Virus record (IMG/VR): IMGVR_UViG_3300009011_000002
Coordinates: 1-64,000 of that record
DNA length: 64,000 nucleotides
Reading direction: 5' to 3' (one strand)
In this document: positions 33,606 through 56,841 of the stretch, piece by piece
Layout: each line of letters opens with the position of its first letter
Position numbering within the stretch: position 1 is the first letter of the stretch
Made by a program: the position numbers and the translations under genes
The notes under the pieces: generated by a model
Database searches by the model: none
What the model saw: only the letters and a program-made list of their open reading frames with translations
Told to the model about the DNA's origin: nothing

Positions 33606-33932
33606 ATGCCTATTTCTGATGCTTATAGCACCGAAAAGGACGTTTTCTATACCGACCGATATAAAACGTTGGTCAGGTCCCAAAAAGAAACATTGCTAAA
33701 AACAGCTCAACAGATCCCCATCTTGGACCGTGCACAGCTACACGCGTACCGTACGGATGTGTACCGTGTGCTGCGGAGTCTGAAAGTCCCTCCCCACTTG
33801 TACTGGACGACGGCCTTTATCAATGGGCTGGAGAACCCAGACGCAGACGTTAGCGGGCTGAAGTTTATCTACAGCGTGCAGGAAAACGTCTTGGAGAAAA
33901 TGATCTCGCGTAGCAATACGCAGCGTGGCTAA
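33606..33932 (+). CDS. small LysM-like/baseplate (P2 gpX, T4 gp53-like) protein
   Basis: 108 aa, GAGG RBS; HLYWTTAFINGLENP resembles the W..IA..N.I.NP LysM-like motif. Confidence 0.5.
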   Translation: MPISDAYSTEKDVFYTDRYKTLVRSQKETLLKTAQQIPILDRAQLHAYRTDVYRVLRSLKVPPHLYWTTAFINGLENPDADVSGLKFIYSVQENVLEKMISRSNTQRG

Positions 33933-33955
33933 ATAAAAAATTGAAGGTTAGGAAT

Positions 33956-33981
33956 AGCAGGTGGGGGAGACCCCACCTGCT
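33956..33981. terminator. bidirectional intrinsic terminator
   Basis: AGCAGGTGGGG/CCCCACCTGCT stem between convergent genes. Confidence 0.75.
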
Positions 33982-33997
33982 TATCCGTTATGGCTGC

Positions 33998-35485
33998 TTA
34001 GAAAGTAGCCGCGTTGGCATCGCTACCGCCGTACTGTACTGCGTTACCGCCACCGGAAGTGACCGGCGCCGACATTTGGTACATCCCCATCATGTTCGGT
34101 TGCATGCCCATCATCGGCATCATACCTGGCATACCCATCATGCCCGGCATGCCCATCATGTTGGGTTGCACCCCCATCATGTTCGGCATCATGTTCGGGA
34201 GCATCTGCTGTTGCTGCATGCCCTGGATTTCGGAGCGCTGCAGTTTGTTACCCTGACGGGTGCACAGGTAGATGACCGGAACGCCGTGCATGGTGACCGC
34301 ATGGTGGATCACACGGTTACCGGCCATGTCGATTTCGGACCGCACATAACGGTCGCCCATTTCCATAACCGGTGGCGTGGTGTCGAAGCCCATGTTGGAC
34401 TGCTGAACCGGAATCAGCTGTTGCTGTTGCTGCTGCATCTGGTTCGGCTGCTGGAGGATCGTCACATTCTGCTGCGGTTGCTGCTGGGTGTTCGACGACG
34501 ACACCGACATGAGACCCGACAGGTCAGACTGGCTGCCCGACGTGTTGGTGTTCTCGTCGTAGGTGTTGTGGCTGTTGTAGTCCAGCACTGGTACCTGACG
34601 GTAGATATCCGGCAGCTCTTCCATGTGCTCTGCCCAATCAACGTCGATCGGGTAGACGCCGGCCTTGTCGAAGTCGGCACGGAAGATGTTCTGGATGCGG
34701 TTCAGTTGCTCCGCGATGTCGGTGTAGCAACCCAGGTACGACACCAGGCGAGCAGCCACCGGATGAACCGATTCGAACTCGTAATCGTTCGGGTTGAGCA
34801 CCGCCGGAATGATCGACTGGAACAGGTGAGCCGCCACCTTCAATGCCGCACGCGACACGCTGAAGTTGTTGATCTCGACCAGCTGGTTGTCGGACTGACC
34901 TTCGGAACGCACCAGGCGCTTGATGACCTCGTCGTAGAACGGGAAGGTAGGACGAGTCTTGTAGTAGACCTTCTCACCCGACCGCTGGCTACGGCCACCG
35001 CCCTTGGTCACCTTGAGGTGCATGAAGCGGTTGTCCAGGCCGTTGTCGTCGATCTCGACCTTCATCTGCTTGAACAGTTCGCTCAGTTCGTCACGCACAG
35101 AACGCTTGATCTTCTTGAGCGGTTCCAGCAGGTCCAGGGTTTCCTGCTTCCAGGCTTTCTTCTCGGGACCACCGGCCACGCCGATCAACACGATCGGGTA
35201 CTTGCGGAACACGTCGAGGATCTTCATGCTGGTCATCTTGCGGATGATCTTGAAGACCTCGGTTTCCTTCGAGGTGATGTTCTCGCAGGCCGGGTGGAAG
35301 AAGACCTTGGCAACACAGTTACCTTCCAGGACTTCCGACGTCGGCAGGTACATGTCCTGCTCGTCGATGCGAATGTCGATCTCGGCGTTGCTACCGGAGA
35401 CCGTGAAGACGATGCGGCCGTCGTCCTTGACCAAGGCTCCCCACGAAAGGAGCATGGCTTTATACAGCTTGTTGAGTTCGTTCAT
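33998..35485 (-). CDS. conserved nucleus-block protein (phiKZ gp70-like by synteny) with Q/M/G/P low-complexity tail
   Basis: 495 aa between the PicA-like gene and beta-C; C-terminal MMGMPG/QPNMMG repeats. Confidence 0.7.
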   Translation of the reverse strand: MNELNKLYKAMLLSWGALVKDDGRIVFTVSGSNAEIDIRIDEQDMYLPTSEVLEGNCVAKVFFHPACENITSKETEVFKIIRKMTSMKILDVFRKYPIVLIGVAGGPEKKAWKQETLDLLEPLKKIKRSVRDELSELFKQMKVEIDDNGLDNRFMHLKVTKGGGRSQRSGEKVYYKTRPTFPFYDEVIKRLVRSEGQSDNQLVEINNFSVSRAALKVAAHLFQSIIPAVLNPNDYEFESVHPVAARLVSYLGCYTDIAEQLNRIQNIFRADFDKAGVYPIDVDWAEHMEELPDIYRQVPVLDYNSHNTYDENTNTSGSQSDLSGLMSVSSSNTQQQPQQNVTILQQPNQMQQQQQQLIPVQQSNMGFDTTPPVMEMGDRYVRSEIDMAGNRVIHHAVTMHGVPVIYLCTRQGNKLQRSEIQGMQQQQMLPNMMPNMMGVQPNMMGMPGMMGMPGMMPMMGMQPNMMGMYQMSAPVTSGGGNAVQYGGSDANAATF

Positions 35486-35494
35486 GGGGAAACC

Positions 35495-36934
35495 TTATGC
35501 AAAGTGATCGCGAATGTTGGTCATCAGGTTCTTGGCCTCGGCGAGACCGTTGTCCGATGCGGTGATGTTGGTGCTGGTACGGTTGATACAGTACGTAGCA
35601 TTGACGAAGCGCTGCCCGTTGTTCTGGTCGCCGTTGAAGAAGATCTCCACCGACGTCTCACCAAACACCGAGCACGTCACCATCACGTTCATGATGTGGC
35701 TGCTGTGGACATAGCCGGTGGAGTACTTGGCGAAGAAGTGGGCTTTCAGCAACTGCTTGAACTGCTCTACACGGTTGATGGCGTAGTCGTCGTTGCTCAG
35801 TACCGAACCGAACTCACCGTTGATGATCTCCACACCGTCGTCCGAACCTTGCAGACCGTGGAAGTCGTGTGGGTTGTTGGTAGCCGAGAACACCAGGTGA
35901 GTCAGACCCACTTGGATCAGCAGGTGTACGGTGAGGAAGGCCAGTTCGCACGCGATGATCTCGTGGTTGGTAATCCGACCATAGTCCATAGAGTCCATCA
36001 GGTTGTTGACTTGCGTGAACGTAGTAGGGTTCAGCAGGTCGAGGTTCAGCACTTGCGGCAGGTTGGTAAAGACCGACGCAATCTCTTGCACCGACCAACC
36101 TTGGAAGCCGTTCATCATGTTGCTGGTGCCGAGGTTGAACATCATGGCCTGGAAGAATTCGTTGTCAGTCAACGAAGCTTCCTGAATGCCAACACCACCC
36201 ATGCTTTCCGAGAAGGCATTCTCCATACCGATCTTCTGCGCGGTAATGCCGGTGTTGGTGGCCAGCTTAAGCAGTTCCTTCGCATGGTGCGTAGGATTGA
36301 GGTTCTGCGTCTTGGACGAGACAACCGTCTTCGCCAAGTTGGTACCCAGGGTGCCGTCGTACTGAGCACCGATGCCGTCTTCTTCACAGGCCATGAAGCC
36401 GAGTGCTTCGTTGGCCACGTCCATCGGGCGAATAGCCTTGAGCTTCTTCTGGCCGAATGGGTCACCCAGCAGGAACTGTTGCGACGACGTGATGCTGGTG
36501 CTGGCCAGTGGGAACCCGTGGTTGTCTTGTACGTTTTTGGTTTCCGACGACCATGCCCGCACTGGTACGAACAGGGTTTCTGGTGGAATACCTTCCATCG
36601 AGGCACCTGAGCCACCGGTCAGGTAACCGAGCACCACCAGTTCCACGGAGCTCAGCGAGTTGCGGGTAACCTGGAAGCGGAGCATACCGATACCGCGACG
36701 GATGTTGAAACCGTCTTCGATATTGACCATACCGCCAGGCTGTGCGCTCAGGCCACCGGACTGTTCAGCGACGGCTTGCAGCGTGGTACCCTTGATACCT
36801 CCCTGGAACTGTTCCATCTTCAGCGTGTCCATCATCATGCTGTTTGGATTCATGACGTTATGACGATGGTAGTGGTCGTGGTTCGCGTTGCCCATACCGA
36901 ACAGTGCTTGAGTCAGGATTACTTCTTTTTCCAT
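35495..36934 (-). CDS. picA: phage-nucleus protein importer PicA/Imp1 (phiKZ gp69-like)
   Basis: position directly after the sigma-like subunit and compatible size (479 aa); assignment mainly by synteny. Confidence 0.6.
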   Translation of the reverse strand: MEKEVILTQALFGMGNANHDHYHRHNVMNPNSMMMDTLKMEQFQGGIKGTTLQAVAEQSGGLSAQPGGMVNIEDGFNIRRGIGMLRFQVTRNSLSSVELVVLGYLTGGSGASMEGIPPETLFVPVRAWSSETKNVQDNHGFPLASTSITSSQQFLLGDPFGQKKLKAIRPMDVANEALGFMACEEDGIGAQYDGTLGTNLAKTVVSSKTQNLNPTHHAKELLKLATNTGITAQKIGMENAFSESMGGVGIQEASLTDNEFFQAMMFNLGTSNMMNGFQGWSVQEIASVFTNLPQVLNLDLLNPTTFTQVNNLMDSMDYGRITNHEIIACELAFLTVHLLIQVGLTHLVFSATNNPHDFHGLQGSDDGVEIINGEFGSVLSNDDYAINRVEQFKQLLKAHFFAKYSTGYVHSSHIMNVMVTCSVFGETSVEIFFNGDQNNGQRFVNATYCINRTSTNITASDNGLAEAKNLMTNIRDHFA

Positions 36935-36960: not shown

Positions 36961-38541
36961 TTAACCGTTTACGTGACGAACCAACGACATGAATTCTTTC
37001 TTGATTTCCACATCAATGTCGATTGAGAACATCGAACCTTCTTTGACCCGGCCGTAGATTTCCTCGTTGTCCAACACCCCGTATTCCAAGTTGGACATCC
37101 ACTGGCCGTTGCCAAACAACTCCAGGAACTGTTCTGCCGAGACCAACGCTTCATTGAAAGAGCGCCCGTCATTGTTCCTGGATTGGACTTCACAGATCGA
37201 AGCTAAGTAATCCTTCTCTTCGGTGTTCAGTTTCAGTCCATCTCCCAGCGCTCGCTGTCCGTTCGGGTCGTGGATTGCCCCCAGCAAGGATGGAAGGTAT
37301 TTGTAGCCCATCTCGCTCAACCACACCTGCGCAATGGCAATCGCTGCCATGAGCTGAGGGTAGTAGGCCGCATCATAAATGAACGGCGAAGCGACGATGG
37401 TTTCTTCGGTCAGTTGACCTGCGTACGTCAGTTGCAGGATCTTCCGAATGTGGTCGGTCAACTCGAAGTCCCAGTTAGGTGGGAGATTGTCGTAGACCTT
37501 CTCGATCAGCTTGTGACGTTTGATCCCCAGTGCCAAGGCCTGGTAGTAGAAACGGTCACCGCCACGGGGTGCATCATTCTCGTCGAACAGACCGAAACTG
37601 AAGAACTCCGCTTGTACCGTTTCGTTGGAGGACTTCACCTCTTCGCTGATCTGGTACTTGTCGAGGATCGAGCGTTTGTCGTCATCGTCATCCGACGGAC
37701 GATCTTTGTCGCGGAAGGTAGAACTGCCCGCTTCGTGCAACTTGACAGCTGCGTTGATCGCGGTGGCGATGTTCTTGCCTTCTTCCGTTTCTGGAATAAC
37801 TGCACAGCACAGACGGCCGAACACGGCGTTGTACAGAACCCGATCGACGAAGTTCTCTACGCTGGTCACGCTGTCAACTTGCGAAGGAATGCCCCGCTTG
37901 TTGAACGCGAACTTCACGTAGGTCGACAGTTTCAACCAGCCCTGCATGGCTGACAGCACCGGGTTGTCTTTGATCAGGCGACCGCACACCAGTTCTGCAC
38001 TCGGAATACCCATGTGCGGTTCGAACCGTGCAATCAACCCGAAGACGATCGGGTAGATGGTCCGTACCGAGAACGCGTACTTCACCATGCCGATGTAATC
38101 TTGGTCCATGATGGTCGTTTGTTCTGGATAGTCGCCTTTACTCGCGGCTTTGCTCAGGTCCTTAGGGATCCTGAGGTATTTGTCCGAGTATTGAATGAAG
38201 TCACAGTATTTATACACGTTGATGAAATCAATGATCTCATCGCAGATGGGTTTCAGCCGCTCCAGTTCGGCGTCGTATTCCACGACCTTGCCGCTGTCCA
38301 CGATCTTGTGCGCTTTCTCGTAGAGGGCAAACAGCTTTTCTTGCTGCTCGTGGTTCATGGTGCTCTGGACGTAATCGTTCTGGCAATCGAAGAGATTACT
38401 CTCTGGTTCGTTGCGGTCCTTGATCACCTTCTCGAGCTTGATGGTGGCTTTACCGTTGAACTTAAGCACATGGCTGTTCATGGTAATAACAATAGCTTCC
38501 AAGGATTTCTTGGAGCTACGACGTGTGTCAATTGAGAACAT
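36961..38541 (-). CDS. non-virion RNAP sigma-like specificity subunit (phiKZ gp68-like)
   Basis: ATG 38541 with GGAG RBS, ~526 aa, helical; synteny between ChmC-like and PicA-like genes. Confidence 0.65.
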   Translation of the reverse strand: MFSIDTRRSSKKSLEAIVITMNSHVLKFNGKATIKLEKVIKDRNEPESNLFDCQNDYVQSTMNHEQQEKLFALYEKAHKIVDSGKVVEYDAELERLKPICDEIIDFINVYKYCDFIQYSDKYLRIPKDLSKAASKGDYPEQTTIMDQDYIGMVKYAFSVRTIYPIVFGLIARFEPHMGIPSAELVCGRLIKDNPVLSAMQGWLKLSTYVKFAFNKRGIPSQVDSVTSVENFVDRVLYNAVFGRLCCAVIPETEEGKNIATAINAAVKLHEAGSSTFRDKDRPSDDDDDKRSILDKYQISEEVKSSNETVQAEFFSFGLFDENDAPRGGDRFYYQALALGIKRHKLIEKVYDNLPPNWDFELTDHIRKILQLTYAGQLTEETIVASPFIYDAAYYPQLMAAIAIAQVWLSEMGYKYLPSLLGAIHDPNGQRALGDGLKLNTEEKDYLASICEVQSRNNDGRSFNEALVSAEQFLELFGNGQWMSNLEYGVLDNEEIYGRVKEGSMFSIDIDVEIKKEFMSLVRHVNG

Positions 38542-38575
38542 GAAAAGAACACTCCAATTGCGTATGCTCAACCAA

Positions 38576-38593
38576 ATAATGTAGGTTTCAAAT
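38576..38593 (-). promoter_or_regulatory. early-type promoter ATTTGAAACCTACATTAT
   Basis: copy of the conserved motif. Confidence 0.7.
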
Positions 38594-38635
38594 ATTGTTA
38601 CCTGAGCATGAATCGGCTATCGGCCATAGATAAAG

Positions 38636-38664
38636 TAGGGTAAGGGGCAGTGCCCCTTACCCTA
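38636..38664 (-). terminator. intrinsic terminator
   Basis: TAGGGTAAGGGGCA/TGCCCCTTACCCTA stem followed by CTTTAT on the minus strand. Confidence 0.75.
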
Positions 38665-38679
38665 TTCAGGAGACGAGGA

Positions 38680-39411
38680 TCAGAAGTCGTCGTCGAAGCC
38701 GCCGCTGTCGCCGGAGTCGAAGTCGTTGGACTGGCCACCGCCACCGCCACCGTTGTTACGGTTGTTGTAGCCACCGCCGCCACCGCCTTGTGGTTCACGC
38801 GGTTTCGGTGCTTCCCAGCCGTTCTCTTCCATCTGGTTCAGGATACGCTCGTGGAACTTGATGTACGCACGTACCGAGAAGCGGGACAGGATCGAGTGGT
38901 CTTCGACTGCGTTGCCGTCGGCGCCGCGGGTCATGATCACCATGTCGCGCGGACCGCTGAACACGAATACAGCTTTGTAGTCACCCTTGGTCCAGCCGAG
39001 GGTAATGAAACCGTTGGCTTCACGACGGATGGTCAGCTTGACTTGGACGATCGGGCTGTCCGACATTTTGCCGCCGCCTGGCTGATAAACGAACTGCTTC
39101 TTGCGGGGAACCACTTGACGCTCTACGAACTCCTTCGAGTTGGCTGCTTCCAGCAATGCCTCGAACAGCACGCCACGGTCGTGCCAGTCCATGTCGACTT
39201 CTTTGTGGGTGTTCTTGCCACCTTCCTTGAACACGCCATCGTTGACCTTGAGGACAATGGCGCCGTTGTTCTTCTGCTCCCACATCAGCTGGGCCGGGTA
39301 CTTGCCGCCTGCGAGAGGTTCAGCAGTAGCCGGCAGGGGCTGACGGTAGTCGTTCAGGATGTGTTTCTTGCGGGGGGTGATCGGAGCGCGATTGCCGTTC
39401 ATTCGAGACAT
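38680..39411 (-). CDS. chmC: nucleus-associated RNA-binding protein ChmC (phiKZ gp67-like)
   Basis: beta-rich body plus Gly/Asn-rich acidic tail GGGGGGYNNRNNGGGGGGQSNDFDSGDSGGFDDDF; immediately upstream of the sigma-like gene. Confidence 0.65.
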   Translation of the reverse strand: MSRMNGNRAPITPRKKHILNDYRQPLPATAEPLAGGKYPAQLMWEQKNNGAIVLKVNDGVFKEGGKNTHKEVDMDWHDRGVLFEALLEAANSKEFVERQVVPRKKQFVYQPGGGKMSDSPIVQVKLTIRREANGFITLGWTKGDYKAVFVFSGPRDMVIMTRGADGNAVEDHSILSRFSVRAYIKFHERILNQMEENGWEAPKPREPQGGGGGGYNNRNNGGGGGGQSNDFDSGDSGGFDDDF

Positions 39412-45318: not shown

Positions 45319-47358
45319 TTACAGGAACGGAACGCCCATGTTGTAGCCCATGCCCAGGTTGGCGCCGGTTGGGTTGTTGGAGCCGGCGGCTGCCATGGTG
45401 GCCAGACCGACACCTGGAGCGAACACCAAGCCAGTGGTACGGAACGAACCGATGTTGTTCGCGACGTTCAGCTGACCGATGCCGTCCATTGCTTCACCCA
45501 GGGCAGCCATGAAGCCAGGAGCCCAGATGTGCGGCTGAGCGAAACCGTTGATGTGGACGGCGCCGTCGAAGATCGACGAGTGCAGTTCCACGCGCAGTTT
45601 CTGGCAACGCTGCTTGAAATCTTCCTGAGGGTTGGAACCGTAGATGGTGCTCAGGTAGCTTTCGATGGCAGGCAGGCCGTTCTTGCCCTTGATGTTCGAG
45701 ATCATCATCTCGTCCAGTTCTTGGGTGTTCAGCTTCTTGCCAGCAGCTTCGGCCAGGCCGTTGACCGCGATCATACCGGTAGGCATGAGCACTGGGTCTT
45801 TCGGGGTCCAGCCGTTCTTGCCCGGCTCGGCGTTGCGAGCGATGATGGCCGACATCTTGTTGTTGGTCATGGCGTCGATGATGGCAACGACGGTCTTGAC
45901 CTGCGCAGCGTTGTCCTTCTTCGCCAGCAGCAGCAGGAAGTTGTGGATGGACGCGTGCGGACCGGATTGCAGCAGGTTGACCTGGAAGGTCGCGTGCGGC
46001 GAAACGTTCTGACGGATCCACTGGTTGACCAGATCGGTGTCGCTGATCTTCTTGTCGTCCAGCACGATGCGCTGAGCTTGCAGGCCGCCAGGCACCTGGG
46101 TGAGCAGGTGTTGCAGACGGATTTCCATGGCGGACAGGTTGCCACGCGAACCGACGCTGTGCTTACGCAGGGCTTCCGACCACACGAAGTTGGCGTTGGT
46201 TGCCATCAGCAGGTACAGGGCGTAGAAGTACGGGTACAGGCCGCCGTTGTAGCCCAGCATTTCACCAGCTTGCACGGCGTCCATGGTGATCACTGGACGC
46301 AGCGGGCGGTAGCCGTTGGCGTAGACCGCTTGACCCATACCGGCACCCAGGAACGCTTGCAGCTGTGCGATCTTTTCCGGGGACTGGTGGGACATGTAGA
46401 AGCGGCTGTACTCTTCCCAGCTCACGCCGTTCAGGCTGACGGTCGCTTGCACGCGAGCGATCTCTTTCGAGTTGCCCTGGTAAGCGTTGTTGCCCGACTG
46501 GTTGTTGTTGATGGTGGAAGCGATCACTTCCATGTTCGCGGCGGTCAGGGTCTTGCCCTTGGTGACGCGACCGGAGATCGCGGTAACACGAGCTTCGGCG
46601 CAACCGTCTTTGCCGTAAGGCTGCTGCGGGTTCTGGAACGGGTTCGGGGTTTTCATGTTCGCCGCAGCGGCGATTTCCTGGACCGACTTGACCAGCAGTG
46701 CTTCGTCCCATTCCGACGCCAGGAAGTTGGCGACGTTACGCGGCCATTCCTTGGTGTCGCCCGCTTCCGGGTGGTGCAGCATGTCCATGTCCTGGACGAG
46801 CATGTTGATGACGGCCACGTTCTTGATGCCCTGGGTTTCCGCTTCGCGCTGGTAGTGCGATTTCAGGGCTTCGTAGAACTGCTGGTTGGTGTACTGCACC
46901 GGCGACAGTGGAATCGAAACCTGGGACTGACCGAAGCCGCCTGGGTTGTTGATGGTGATGCGCTCGGAGCTGATGTTCAGTTCACCGGTGGAGAACAGCG
47001 TGGCCATCACGTACAGGGTGTCGCCGATCTTGCAGCTGAAGCCCAGGCCCGGCAGCGTCGCGGAGATCGAGCTGGTCAGGGTTTTCAGATCCGGGATGGT
47101 TTTGCGCTGCAGTTCGTTGGTGGTGGAAGTTTTCAGGCGCTCGTAGATCTCGGTGAGTTCCTTGAGTACGTCGCCGACGATGTTCAGGTTGCGGCTGTCC
47201 GAGGTCATCGATGCCAGGGAGAACAAACCCGCCAGACCGCTTTGGACGGTACCAGCAGTGAAAGCCGCGTTGGAGGCAGGAGCTTCACCGCCAGCTTGGG
47301 CGTTCGCTTTGTTGGTGTCTTCGCCCCAGGAAGGGTTGTAATCGCTGTTCAGGCTCAT
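45319..47358 (-). CDS. chmA: chimallin, phage nuclear shell protein (phiKZ gp54-like)
   Basis: 679 aa, very strong codon bias, own early promoter and terminator, directly upstream of nvRNAP beta'-N, extended low-complexity termini. Confidence 0.8.
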   Translation of the reverse strand: MSLNSDYNPSWGEDTNKANAQAGGEAPASNAAFTAGTVQSGLAGLFSLASMTSDSRNLNIVGDVLKELTEIYERLKTSTTNELQRKTIPDLKTLTSSISATLPGLGFSCKIGDTLYVMATLFSTGELNISSERITINNPGGFGQSQVSIPLSPVQYTNQQFYEALKSHYQREAETQGIKNVAVINMLVQDMDMLHHPEAGDTKEWPRNVANFLASEWDEALLVKSVQEIAAAANMKTPNPFQNPQQPYGKDGCAEARVTAISGRVTKGKTLTAANMEVIASTINNNQSGNNAYQGNSKEIARVQATVSLNGVSWEEYSRFYMSHQSPEKIAQLQAFLGAGMGQAVYANGYRPLRPVITMDAVQAGEMLGYNGGLYPYFYALYLLMATNANFVWSEALRKHSVGSRGNLSAMEIRLQHLLTQVPGGLQAQRIVLDDKKISDTDLVNQWIRQNVSPHATFQVNLLQSGPHASIHNFLLLLAKKDNAAQVKTVVAIIDAMTNNKMSAIIARNAEPGKNGWTPKDPVLMPTGMIAVNGLAEAAGKKLNTQELDEMMISNIKGKNGLPAIESYLSTIYGSNPQEDFKQRCQKLRVELHSSIFDGAVHINGFAQPHIWAPGFMAALGEAMDGIGQLNVANNIGSFRTTGLVFAPGVGLATMAAAGSNNPTGANLGMGYNMGVPFL

Positions 47359-55596: not shown

Positions 55597-55644
55597 ATTC
55601 TTTCCCGTTGCCAAACCTACATTTGCTGCAATTCGTACAGGCCT

Positions 55645-56823: not shown

Positions 56824-56841
56824 GTGATGTAGGTTTGAAAT
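56824..56841 (-). promoter_or_regulatory. early-type promoter ATTTCAAACCTACATCAC
   Basis: copy of the conserved motif upstream of the HslV-like gene. Confidence 0.7.

What the first reader, a model, noticed from the sequence alone, without database searches (positions are those of the whole stretch)
33998..34560. Prion-like Met/Gly/Pro/Gln tail on the gene co-transcribed with PicA
Seen: poly-Q tracts, a short globular-looking insert, then MLPNMMPNMMGVQPNMMGMPGMMGMPGMMPMMGMQPNMMGMYQM (DNA repeats ~34085-34200), nearly charge-free. The gene lies directly downstream of the PicA-like importer and near ChmC, whose G/N tail is known to form condensates. Inference: Met-sticker/Gly-Pro-spacer repeats could form a condensate or selective barrier at shell import sites, analogous to FG-nucleoporins.
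Basis: partly seen in the sequence, partly recalled or inferred. Interest (0 to 1): 0.6.

Follow-up and report, generated by a model that had tools for sequence, protein, structure and literature searches.

The report
Methionine-rich tail on phage-nucleus protein
A core protein of nucleus-forming jumbo phages, encoded right after the nuclear import factor PicA and shown at the nuclear shell in a relative, ends in a disordered, charge-free, methionine-rich tail whose composition (not its sequence) is kept in about 185 relatives, which gives an uncharacterised protein a testable "sticky tail" mechanism.

Summary
Window 33998-35485 (-) encodes a 495-aa protein with four parts. There is an N-domain of unknown fold (residues 1-306), a Q/N/S-rich disordered linker (307-366), a confident four-strand beta mini-domain (367-420) and a 75-aa tail (421-495). 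The tail has 21 Met and one charged residue and ends in Phe.

The protein is the orthologue of phiKZ gp70 / PhiPA3 gp64 (phrog_3520).

The tail is conserved by composition. In 86 aligned orthologues the tails average 18% Met and 2.4% charged residues, and 85 of 86 have an aromatic residue among the last three. Where Met is lost, other hydrophobic residues replace it. This happened repeatedly and independently on the tree (sign test p about 5e-4).

Published work places PhiPA3 gp64 at the nuclear shell. However, phiKZ gp70 did not co-purify with Imp1, and antisense knock-down gave no scored plaque defect.

I read the tail as a sticker-and-spacer interaction module with a hydrophobic terminal anchor. 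A condensate is plausible but untested. An FG-nucleoporin-like barrier is unsupported speculation: the tail is short and has no FG motifs. I found no paper describing this tail.

The parts
33998..35485 (-). CDS of the 495-aa protein, orthologue of phiKZ gp70 / PhiPA3 gp64 (stop codon 33998-34000)
   Evidence: ORF list. phrog_3520 at E 2.6e-105, the same family as phiKZ gp70. BLASTP to gp70 gives E 1e-9. Synteny holds in EL, RisingSun, FishSpeaker and phiKZ.
34568..35485 (-). N-terminal folded domain, residues 1-306, orphan alpha/beta fold
   Evidence: AF2 pLDDT above 90 in the full model. Folded alone it gives pLDDT 92 and pTM 0.90. No PDB match: Foldseek E above 0.6, VIA Z at most 5.5. The atlas returns only viral hypothetical proteins. 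There are 17 invariant residues, including H64, P65, C67 and E68.
34388..34567 (-). Q/N/S-rich disordered linker, residues 307-366, with the poly-Q tracts
   Evidence: Most of it has pLDDT below 50. Q 28%, S 15%, N 10% in this protein. Orthologues average Q 17.7% and N 16.9%, with lengths of 41-67 residues.
34226..34387 (-).
   Evidence: Four strands with pLDDT about 95. It is conserved at 52-57 residues in 86 orthologues, with near-invariant P372, G377 and G412. Structural matches are only generic: propeller blades, WRKY and YpmB, Z at most 6.3. It is also present in phages Miami and pTD1.
34073..34219 (-). Met-rich sticker/spacer core of the tail, residues 423-471 (21 Met in 49 residues, no charge)
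   Evidence: Translation. 19 Met in the best 40-residue window, p about 3e-20. pLDDT below 50. Compositional conservation and hydrophobic compensation across orthologues.
34001..34072 (-). C-terminal tip, residues 472-495: P-V-T-S-G motif, one Asp, terminal Phe
   Evidence: 85 of 86 orthologues have an aromatic residue among the last three. 73 of 86 have Asp or Glu in the last 12. 47 of 61 phiKZ-clade proteins have L/I/V/M among the last two residues.
34103..34198 (.). Short imperfect tandem DNA repeats that underlie the MPGMMG and PNMM peptide repeats
   Evidence: TRF reports period 9/18 at 34103-34160 (88% match for the 18-mer) and period 12 at 34175-34198.
33951..33986 (-). Terminator-like hairpin after the stop codon, followed 17 nt later by a U-run at about 33931-33941
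   Evidence: RNA fold gives -27.4 kcal/mol and z -5.15, with 0 of 200 shuffles as stable. It lies between convergent genes.
35495..36934 (-). PicA/Imp1 orthologue (479 aa), 9 nt upstream of the target
   Evidence: phrog_3141 at E 4.4e-82. phiKZ gp69 is in the same family at E 2.7e-179. Synteny supports it. Direct BLASTP to gp69 is not significant.
36961..38571 (-). Orthologue of phiKZ gp68 (nvRNAP subunit) by position, first gene of the unit; the true start is probably the ATG at 38541
   Evidence: phrog_3209 at E 9e-108, with the profile alignment starting at residue 14. Same position as EL gp33 and phiKZ gp68; gp68 itself was not scanned against PHROGs. The promoter motif lies only 9 nt from the called TTG start.
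38577..38599 (-). Promoter-like motif shared with the promoter annotated upstream of EL gp33
   Evidence: Sequence comparison. The 12-mer core occurs 3 times in the window against 0.14 expected.
38680..39411 (-). ChmC/Imp6 orthologue with a G/N-rich tail ending in an acidic tip and Phe
   Evidence: phrog_3284, the same family as phiKZ gp67. Translation. A hairpin at 38636-38664 separates it from the next unit.
45319..47358 (-). ChmA (chimallin, major nuclear shell protein)
   Evidence: phrog_4795 'nuclear shell protein' at E 2.8e-121. Annotated as nuclear shell protein in the EL and RisingSun RefSeq records.

Best explanation
The stretch encodes the disordered C-terminal third of the chimallivirus core protein orthologous to phiKZ gp70 / PhiPA3 gp64. 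This protein is of unknown function and is expressed within minutes of infection in phiKZ and PhiPA3; PhiPA3 gp64 was seen at the nuclear shell.

The last 75 residues form a low-complexity sticker-and-spacer module. The stickers are hydrophobic, mostly Met, and make up about 37% of the low-complexity part. The spacers are Gly, Asn, Gln and Pro. Charge is almost absent, and a short tip ends in an aromatic residue.

Selection keeps the composition, the charge depletion and the hydrophobic C-terminus, but not the sequence. The most likely mechanism is many weak hydrophobic contacts. These would act with other copies of the tail (cohesion, possibly a condensate) and/or with hydrophobic grooves of partners at the shell periphery. 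The terminal aromatic residue would serve as an anchor. The folded N-domain and the mini-domain would carry the specific function, which is still unknown.

Shown here: presence, predicted disorder, orthology, gene context, compositional conservation, and replacement of Met by other hydrophobic residues.
Inferred: self-association or condensation, the partners, and shell location in this particular phage.
For: - Orthology and context.
- Disorder: pLDDT below 50 over most of 421-495 and all of 461-495, while both folded parts score above 90.
- Composition across 86 aligned orthologues: tail Met 17.9% against 3.4% in the N-domain; charged residues 2.4% against about 26%; length 49-111, median 74.
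- Sequence identity in aligned tail columns is 28%, against 54% in the N-domain. Yet the hydrophobic fraction of the low-complexity part is tightly held at 0.373, sd 0.054, CV 0.15. Met alone has CV 0.46.
- On a tree of 185 N-domains there are 31 switches between Met-rich and Met-poor tails. In independent pairs, other hydrophobic residues rise when Met falls 12.1 times and fall 0.2 times (median p 5e-4).
- The linker in the same protein is a different, hydrophobic-poor kind of disorder (Q/N/S). So composition is specific to each segment.
- A hydrophobic C-terminus is conserved in both clades. The tail is also present in the named phages EL, RisingSun, FishSpeaker, phiKZ, Miami and pTD1.
- Published: PhiPA3 gp64 is at the shell, expressed early, and pulled down with ChmB (PMC10643120). 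The neighbouring ChmC forms condensates through its own low-complexity tail (PMC11077065). Met-rich low-complexity domains of Pbp1 and TDP-43 are reviewed in the context of phase separation (PMC8394241, title and abstract only).
- phiKZ orf70 carries only one accepted transposon insertion in 1302 bp (PMC12676376 supplement).
Against: - There is no experiment on any tail of this family, and no phase-separation predictor could be run here.
- phiKZ gp70 is listed among nuclear proteins rather than shell puncta, and it did not co-purify with Imp1.
- Antisense knock-down of PHIKZ070 has no phenotype score.
- The near-absence of transposon insertions could be a polar effect on the nvRNAP genes downstream.
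- Met-poor tails have a lower total hydrophobic fraction (0.29 against 0.38), so compensation is partial.
- One orthologue (P0180) has an Arg/Ser/Tyr-rich charged tail instead.
- The fixed windows used clip into the mini-domain in the shortest tails.
Confidence: 0.5

Rival explanations
1. One reading: the Met/Gly/Pro tails of many copies form a cohesive, selective phase or brush at PicA import sites in the ChmA shell. It would act as a permeability barrier in the manner of FG-nucleoporins.
For: The tail is charge-depleted with hydrophobic stickers and polar spacers. The gene is adjacent to PicA and probably co-transcribed with it in every relative examined. PhiPA3 gp64 is at the shell and was recovered with gp63/PicA in ChmB pull-downs.
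Against: There is no FG dipeptide in the tail. It is only about 75 residues long. phiKZ gp70 did not bind Imp1 in E. coli pull-downs in either direction. gp70 was treated as a nuclear-interior protein in that study. Antisense knock-down has no plaque score, while PicA knock-down abolishes plaques. Nothing is known about oligomeric state or pore association.
Confidence: 0.1
2. Tether plus short motif: the low-complexity part is mainly a flexible spacer. The work is done by the C-terminal tip (P-x-T-[AS]-G, Asp, terminal aromatic), which docks onto a partner as the SSB C-terminal peptide does. In this model the Met richness is secondary.
For: 85 of 86 orthologues have an aromatic residue in the last three, and 73 of 86 have an acidic residue in the last 12. 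phiKZ-clade tails carry other short conserved motifs (L-P-W, N-P-F/Y) and a terminal Leu. ChmC in the same cluster ends in an SSB-like acidic tip with terminal Phe. The SSB architecture of linker plus C-terminal peptide is established (PMC7584906).
Against: A pure spacer would not need a hydrophobic fraction held at about 37% and restored by Leu or Tyr when Met is lost. The first linker in the same protein shows what a hydrophobic-poor spacer looks like. The tip is not acidic like the SSB peptide, and the P-x-T motif is found in only 36 of 86 tails.
Confidence: 0.22
3. An RNA-handling role: the protein works with ChmC and the nvRNAP on phage transcripts or their export. The tail would then promote RNA-protein condensates rather than act in protein import.
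For: The gene sits between the gp68-like nvRNAP subunit gene and PicA on one side and the nvRNAP beta genes on the other, with ChmC just upstream of the unit. The weak best structural matches of the N-domain are HPF/RaiA and dsRBD-like folds (Z 4.2-5.5). One orthologue has an Arg/Ser/Tyr-rich tail typical of RNA-binding proteins (P0180). ChmC forms condensates with RNA.
Against: The structural matches are below the tool's own noise level. The N-domain net charge is slightly negative, median -3. No nucleic-acid-binding family was detected.
Confidence: 0.08
4. Met-specific chemistry: Cu(I)/Ag(I) binding through Mets-type motifs, or a redox switch or sink through Met oxidation.
For: Very high Met density with M-x-M and M-x-x-M spacings. 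Met oxidation is reported to regulate condensates of Pbp1 and TDP-43 (PMC8394241 and PMC12724696, titles and abstracts only).
Against: Met is replaced by Leu/Ile/Val or Tyr/Phe many times on the tree, and in the 86 aligned orthologues it falls to 0-4% in several. No His or Cys accompanies the Met residues. The protein acts inside the infected cell, at or in the phage nucleus in relatives, not in the periplasm where Mets motifs typically operate (the last point from my own knowledge).
Confidence: 0.04
5. No function: a slippage-generated low-complexity appendage drifting neutrally.
For: Short tandem DNA repeats underlie part of it. Length and sequence vary a lot. Antisense knock-down has no score.
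Against: A tail is present in all of about 185 orthologues, whose N-domains fall to about 21% identity. It keeps charge depletion, a constrained hydrophobic fraction and a conserved terminal residue class. Neutral drift would not keep these.
Confidence: 0.05

Closest known systems
phiKZ gp70 / PhiPA3 gp64 (phrog_3520), chimallivirus core protein reported as nuclear-shell-associated
   Same: Same profile family, same position between PicA and the nvRNAP beta genes, same domain order. Both have a charge-poor Met/Gln/Pro/Gly tail with a hydrophobic end.
   Different: Only about 21% identity to gp70. The beta mini-domain was not evident in the gp70 sequence or in its pairwise alignment, though no profile test was made. 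gp70 ends in Leu and carries other short motifs.
ChmC / Imp6 (PhiPA3 gp61, phiKZ gp67) C-terminal N/G-rich region
   Same: A shell-associated protein of the same gene cluster with a disordered low-complexity tail and a conserved tip ending in Phe. Its tail is required for condensates in vitro (window orthologue).
   Different: The ChmC tail is Asn/Gly-rich with an acidic cluster, and it sits on an RNA-binding Whirly tetramer. The tail here is Met-rich, not acidic, and sits on an orphan fold with no shown ligand.
Met-rich low-complexity domains of yeast Pbp1 (ataxin-2) and TDP-43
   Same: Disordered, Met-rich, charge-poor. In those proteins, self-association is tuned by Met (PMC8394241, title and abstract only).
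   Different: Those are eukaryotic cytoplasmic proteins, and by my recollection their domains are longer. Their regulation depends on Met oxidation, whereas here Met can be replaced by Leu or Tyr.
Cohesive FG domains of nucleoporins
   Same: Hydrophobic stickers in a charge-depleted polar spacer, in a protein associated with a selective nuclear boundary (the FG properties are from my own knowledge).
   Different: No FG motifs, about 75 residues instead of hundreds, no known pore anchoring and no known transport receptor. No homology.
Bacterial SSB tail (disordered linker plus C-terminal peptide)
   Same: A folded domain followed by a Gly/Gln/Pro-type disordered linker and a conserved tip with a terminal aromatic residue. 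SSB also phase separates (PMC7584906).
   Different: No OB fold. The tip lacks the acidic D-D-D-I-P-F type cluster. The linker is far richer in Met.

Membership tests
phiKZ gp70 / PhiPA3 gp64 family (phrog_3520) | Significant match to the family profile over most of its length | tested here: met
   E 2.6e-105, covering residues 1-468 against profile positions 1-436 of 439. phiKZ gp70 matches the same profile at E 4.1e-122.
phiKZ gp70 / PhiPA3 gp64 family (phrog_3520) | Encoded directly downstream of PicA/Imp1 and upstream of the nvRNAP beta genes in the conserved block | tested here: met
   The window order matches EL gp33-35, RisingSun gp39-41, FishSpeaker and phiKZ gp68-70.
phiKZ gp70 / PhiPA3 gp64 family (phrog_3520) | Early expression and localisation to the phage nuclear shell or nucleus | not testable with these tools
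   Known only for PhiPA3 gp64 and phiKZ gp70. No RNA run holds this phage.
FG-nucleoporin-type barrier domain | Repeated Phe-Gly motifs | tested here: not met
   No FG dipeptide in residues 421-495. The only Phe is the last residue.
FG-nucleoporin-type barrier domain | Long disordered domain (hundreds of residues) with charge-depleted polar spacers | tested here: not met
   Charge depletion is met, with 1 charged residue in 75. Length is 75 residues here and 49-111 in orthologues.
FG-nucleoporin-type barrier domain | Anchored in a pore and bound by transport receptors | not testable with these tools
   The complex prediction with the ChmA core gave no verdict. phiKZ gp70 did not bind Imp1.
Prion-like (Q/N-rich) domain | Q/N-rich, charge-poor segment of about 60 residues or more, scored by PLAAC | not tested
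   PLAAC is not available here. By composition the linker 311-371 has 38% Q+N, and the Met tail 20%.
Met-rich low-complexity domain (Pbp1 / TDP-43 type) | Disordered segment strongly enriched in Met | tested here: met
   21 Met in 75 residues, 43% in the core, pLDDT below 50.
Met-rich low-complexity domain (Pbp1 / TDP-43 type) | Self-association that is sensitive to Met oxidation | not testable with these tools
   This needs a purified protein. Frequent replacement of Met by Leu or Tyr argues against an oxidation-specific role.
SSB-type C-terminal tail | OB-fold DNA-binding domain | tested here: not met
   There is no OB-fold match for the N-domain or the mini-domain.
SSB-type C-terminal tail | Acidic tip ending in a hydrophobic or aromatic residue | tested here: inconclusive
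   The terminal aromatic is present in 85 of 86 orthologues, and Asp or Glu in the last 12 residues in 73 of 86. There is no acidic cluster, and this protein has a single Asp.
Cu(I)-binding Mets motifs | Conserved Met positions (M-x-M, M-x-x-M) needed for metal binding | tested here: not met
   Met positions are not conserved. In the 86 aligned orthologues, Met content of the low-complexity part ranges from 0 to 46% and is replaced by other hydrophobic residues.

The most novel reading that the evidence does not exclude
The gp70/gp64 family supplies the phage nucleus with a cohesive hydrophobic brush. In this reading the Met tails of several copies, gathered at or beside the PicA/ChmC transport sites of the ChmA lattice, form a selective phase. 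That phase would help decide which proteins or RNAs cross. It would be a bacterial-virus analogue of FG-nucleoporins that arose independently and is built on Met instead of Phe.
Probability: 0.1. Interest if true: 0.9.

Novelty: new variant of a known kind. Interest (0 to 1): 0.55.

Why it matters
How proteins and mRNA cross the chimallin shell is the central open question for nucleus-forming phages. PicA/Imp1 and ChmC/Imp6 are known players. In the conserved gp68-PicA-gp70 gene run, gp70/gp64 is the member with no assigned function. In the papers I could search, no feature of it has been described.

The analysis here adds three things. The protein has a universally retained, composition-conserved hydrophobic sticker tail. 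When Met is lost, other hydrophobic residues take its place. The C-terminal residue is conserved as hydrophobic.

Together these turn 'hypothetical protein' into a concrete hypothesis. It can be tested cheaply by tail deletion, sticker substitution, tail swaps, localisation and in-vitro assembly in phiKZ or PhiPA3.

If the tail proves cohesive, it would be a second low-complexity module at the phage nuclear periphery, chemically different from that of ChmC. It would also be a rare bacterial-virus example of Met-based sticker grammar.

Tried and rejected
- Complex prediction of the ChmA core (residues 52-630) with the mini-domain plus tail (367-495): no verdict (score 0.00, controls not run). 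This is neither support nor evidence against.
- Tail mimicry of ChmA's own C-terminal segment: the ChmA tails are also Gly/Met/Ala-rich. But the terminal residues do not co-vary with those of gp70. The window has ChmA ending in Leu with the target ending in Phe. phiKZ has ChmA ending in Tyr with gp70 ending in Leu. I dropped this idea.
- A shared 'Met code' with other proteins of the genome: one other protein has a Met/Gly/Gln-rich stretch (789 aa, outside the window). Its EL and RisingSun orthologues are not Met-rich there. I dropped this too.
- Function of the folded parts: Pfam gave nothing. Foldseek against the PDB, an exhaustive structural search and the ESM Atlas gave nothing above noise, for the full model and for the N-domain alone. 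The feature search of the tail in the Atlas gave nothing.
- Near-identical phages: none in the phage collection by megablast.
- Expression and co-transcription from reads: the only run holding this DNA is the probable source, a rhizosphere metagenome.
- Literature: searches for 'methionine-rich' with 'phage nucleus', and for ChmD, found nothing relevant. Two recent reviews do not mention gp70 or gp64.
- PLAAC, catGRANULE and dedicated disorder predictors are not available here. pLDDT was used as a proxy for disorder.
Full report
WHAT IS THERE

The window is the first 64 kb of a complete 226,773-bp virus record with terminal repeats. The only sequencing run that holds it is a rhizosphere metagenome. 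It is a nucleus-forming jumbo phage (chimallivirus) of the EL/RisingSun lineage. It has no near-identical relative among deposited phages.

The finding lies in the minus-strand ORF 33998-35485, which encodes 495 aa. An AlphaFold2 model built on 86 orthologues divides the protein into four parts:
- a confident N-domain, residues 1-306 (pLDDT above 90);
- a disordered linker, 307-366;
- a confident four-strand beta mini-domain, 367-420 (pLDDT about 95);
- a disordered tail, 421-495.

Every element it listed is present.
- Poly-Q tracts lie in the linker.
- The 'globular insert' is the mini-domain.
- The Met/Gly/Pro/Asn/Gln tail has 21 Met and one charged residue in 75. Its best 40-residue window holds 19 Met. 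The approximate ORF set I called for this genome averages 2.5% Met, and its next best window has 11.
- Short imperfect tandem DNA repeats underlie the peptide repeats.

IDENTITY AND CONTEXT

The protein belongs to phrog_3520 (E 2.6e-105). phiKZ gp70 belongs to the same family, and direct BLASTP to gp70 gives E 1e-9 at 21% identity.

The gene 9 nt upstream, 35495-36934, is in phrog_3141 together with phiKZ gp69, which is PicA/Imp1. Pairwise BLASTP between the two is not significant. The PicA assignment therefore rests on the profile and on strict synteny in EL, RisingSun, FishSpeaker and phiKZ.

The other neighbours are:
- upstream of PicA, the orthologue by position of gp68, an nvRNAP subunit;
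- then a hairpin;
- then the ChmC/Imp6 orthologue at 38680-39411, in phrog_3284 like phiKZ gp67;
- ChmA at 45319-47358;
- downstream of the target, the nvRNAP beta genes.

Three things argue that gp68-like, PicA and the target form one transcription unit, with the target last.
- A 20-nt motif at 38577-38599 closely matches the promoter annotated at the same place in EL.
- The gaps between the genes are 26 nt and 9 nt.
- A strong hairpin follows the stop codon, with a U-run 17 nt further on (-27.4 kcal/mol, z -5.2).

This is inference. No RNA data exist for this phage.

THE TAIL ACROSS THE FAMILY

Word-based searches returned 131 relatives of the window protein and 60 of phiKZ gp70. All carry a low-complexity C-terminal tail.

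In 86 aligned orthologues of the EL-type clade:
- tail length is 49-111 residues, median 74;
- the tail has Met 17.9%, Gly 16.3%, Asn 11.6%, Gln 9.7% and Pro 9.0%;
- charged residues are 2.4%;
- in the N-domain, by contrast, Met is 3.4% and about a quarter of residues are charged.

The linker of the same proteins is a different kind of disorder, rich in Gln, Asn and Ser and poor in hydrophobic residues.

Aligned tail columns are only 28% identical, against 54% in the N-domain. Yet the hydrophobic fraction of the low-complexity part (Met plus aromatic plus aliphatic) is tightly held at 0.373, sd 0.054. Met alone ranges from 0 to 46%.

On a tree of 185 N-domains, Met-rich and Met-poor tails interchange at least 31 times. 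In phylogenetically independent pairs, a fall in Met goes with a rise in other hydrophobic residues 12.1 times and with a fall 0.2 times (median p 5e-4). Some tails are Leu-based and others Tyr/Gln/Pro-based.

The C-terminus is also conserved.
- 85 of the 86 aligned tails have an aromatic residue among the last three. So do 123 of the 124 EL-type proteins counted. Usually an Asp or Glu lies within the last twelve.
- In the phiKZ clade, 47 of 61 have Leu/Ile/Val/Met among the last two residues, typically a terminal Leu, and 9 more have an aromatic residue.
- phiKZ-clade tails are richer in Gln, Pro and Tyr, and carry short conserved motifs.

Named phages show the same design: EL, RisingSun, FishSpeaker, phiKZ, Miami and pTD1.

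Two caveats apply. The compensation is partial: total hydrophobic fraction is 0.29 in Met-poor tails against 0.38 in Met-rich ones. The fixed window used on the tree also clips the mini-domain in the shortest tails.

THE FOLDED PARTS

Neither folded part could be assigned. Pfam gives nothing.

The N-domain folded alone (pLDDT 92, pTM 0.90) has no match by Foldseek, by an exhaustive structural search or in the ESM Atlas. The best hits are HPF/RaiA- and dsRBD-like, at Z 4.2-5.5, which is below the tool's stated noise level. Its net charge is slightly negative. Seventeen residues are invariant, including an H-P-x-C-E cluster.

The mini-domain is a generic four-strand meander, with Z at most 6.3.

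WHAT THE LITERATURE SAYS

[quoted passage not shown] It is expressed early, has no detectable homology, and was recovered with gp63 (PicA) in ChmB pull-downs (PMC10643120).
- In phiKZ, gp70 is listed among nuclear proteins. gp70-FLAG did not co-purify with Imp1 in either direction, whereas gp67 (ChmC/Imp6) did (10.1101/2024.03.27.586873).
- Two antisense oligomers against PHIKZ070 have no plaque score, while PicA scores +++ and ChmC ++ (PMC12571901).
- Transposon sequencing found one accepted insertion in 1302 bp. That is similar to essential neighbours, but it could be a polar effect on the nvRNAP genes (PMC12676376).
- The ChmC N/G-rich tail is required for condensates in vitro (PMC11077065).
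- I found no paper that mentions the Met-rich tail, and two recent reviews omit the protein.

MECHANISM

The best-supported reading is that the tail is a functional sticker-and-spacer module with a hydrophobic terminal anchor. It would act through many weak hydrophobic contacts. These could be with itself or with partners at the nuclear periphery.

This accounts for five observations: conservation of composition rather than sequence, charge depletion, the constrained hydrophobic fraction, substitution of Met by Leu or Tyr, and the conserved end. A condensate is plausible by analogy with ChmC, with the Met-rich domains of Pbp1 and TDP-43 (PMC8394241), and with SSB (PMC7584906). It is not shown.

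The rivals stand as follows.
- The FG-nucleoporin-like barrier is not excluded, but it lacks any direct support and fails the family's structural criteria.
- A tether carrying only a terminal docking motif is the main rival.
- An RNA-handling role with ChmC and the nvRNAP rests on weak leads only.
- Met-specific metal or redox chemistry is made unlikely by the replaceability of Met.
- Neutral drift is made unlikely by universal retention of the tail.

VERDICT

This is a known but uncharacterised protein family carrying a previously undescribed, strongly conserved Met-based low-complexity tail. I class it as a new variant of a known kind. It is of moderate to high interest because it makes the role of gp70/gp64 directly testable.

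Noticed in passing
window 38680-39411 (-): The ChmC/Imp6 orthologue ends in a Gly/Asn-rich stretch followed by an acidic tip with a terminal Phe (…FDDDF). phiKZ gp67 ends in …DEDMPSF. Both resemble the bacterial SSB C-terminal peptide on a Whirly-fold nucleic-acid binder. This might be how ChmC docks onto Imp1 or other partners.
   Followed up: partly
window 45319-47358 (-), last ~45 residues: The C-terminal tail of ChmA is itself Gly/Met/Ala/Asn-rich with a hydrophobic end, both here and in phiKZ. Its terminal residue does not co-vary with that of the gp70-like tail.
   Followed up: partly
G000:C1:209249-211618 (-) = L006:1250-3619 (-), outside the window: A 789-aa protein (phrog_13213, unknown function), whose EL and RisingSun orthologues lie just downstream of a polymerase gene, has a Met/Gly/Gln/Pro-rich N-terminal stretch. 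It holds 11 Met in 40 residues, the second highest in the genome. The EL and RisingSun orthologues are disordered there but not Met-rich.
   Followed up: yes
window 33606-33932 (+): A small conserved gene (108 aa, phrog_3455) lies convergent to the target and shares the hairpin terminator. A small gene in the same convergent orientation follows the target's orthologue in RisingSun (gp42), FishSpeaker and phiKZ (070.01, by position). Function unknown.
   Followed up: no
protein P0180 (metagenomic orthologue from the phiKZ gp70 search): This one family member has, in place of the charge-free tail, an Arg/Ser/Tyr/Asp/Glu-rich tail. 37 of its last 80 residues are charged, in the style of RS/RGG regions of RNA-binding proteins.
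   Followed up: no
proteins P0129-P0169 (phiKZ-clade tails) and P0118-P0126 (Survivor-like tails): Short conserved motifs are embedded in otherwise low-complexity tails. The phiKZ clade has L-P-W or P-x-W-L and N-P-[FY]. The Survivor-like group has S-G-I-P…G and D-P-Y-T-G. These are candidate linear docking motifs.
   Followed up: no
window 33941-36610 (+): An 889-aa open frame runs antisense to the target and PicA. It is rich in Arg, His, Val and Leu, with no start context. I take it as a shadow frame of the two minus-strand genes, which both have strong family matches.
   Followed up: partly
window 38577-38588 (-), 55613-55624 (+), 56825-56836 (-): A 12-nt core of the promoter-like motif shared with EL recurs three times in the window, allowing one mismatch, against 0.14 expected by chance. 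This may be a phage promoter class.
   Followed up: partly
window 36961-38571 (-): The mechanically called TTG start of the gp68-like gene lies 9 nt from the promoter-like motif. The real start is probably the ATG at 38541, since the profile alignment begins at residue 14.
   Followed up: partly
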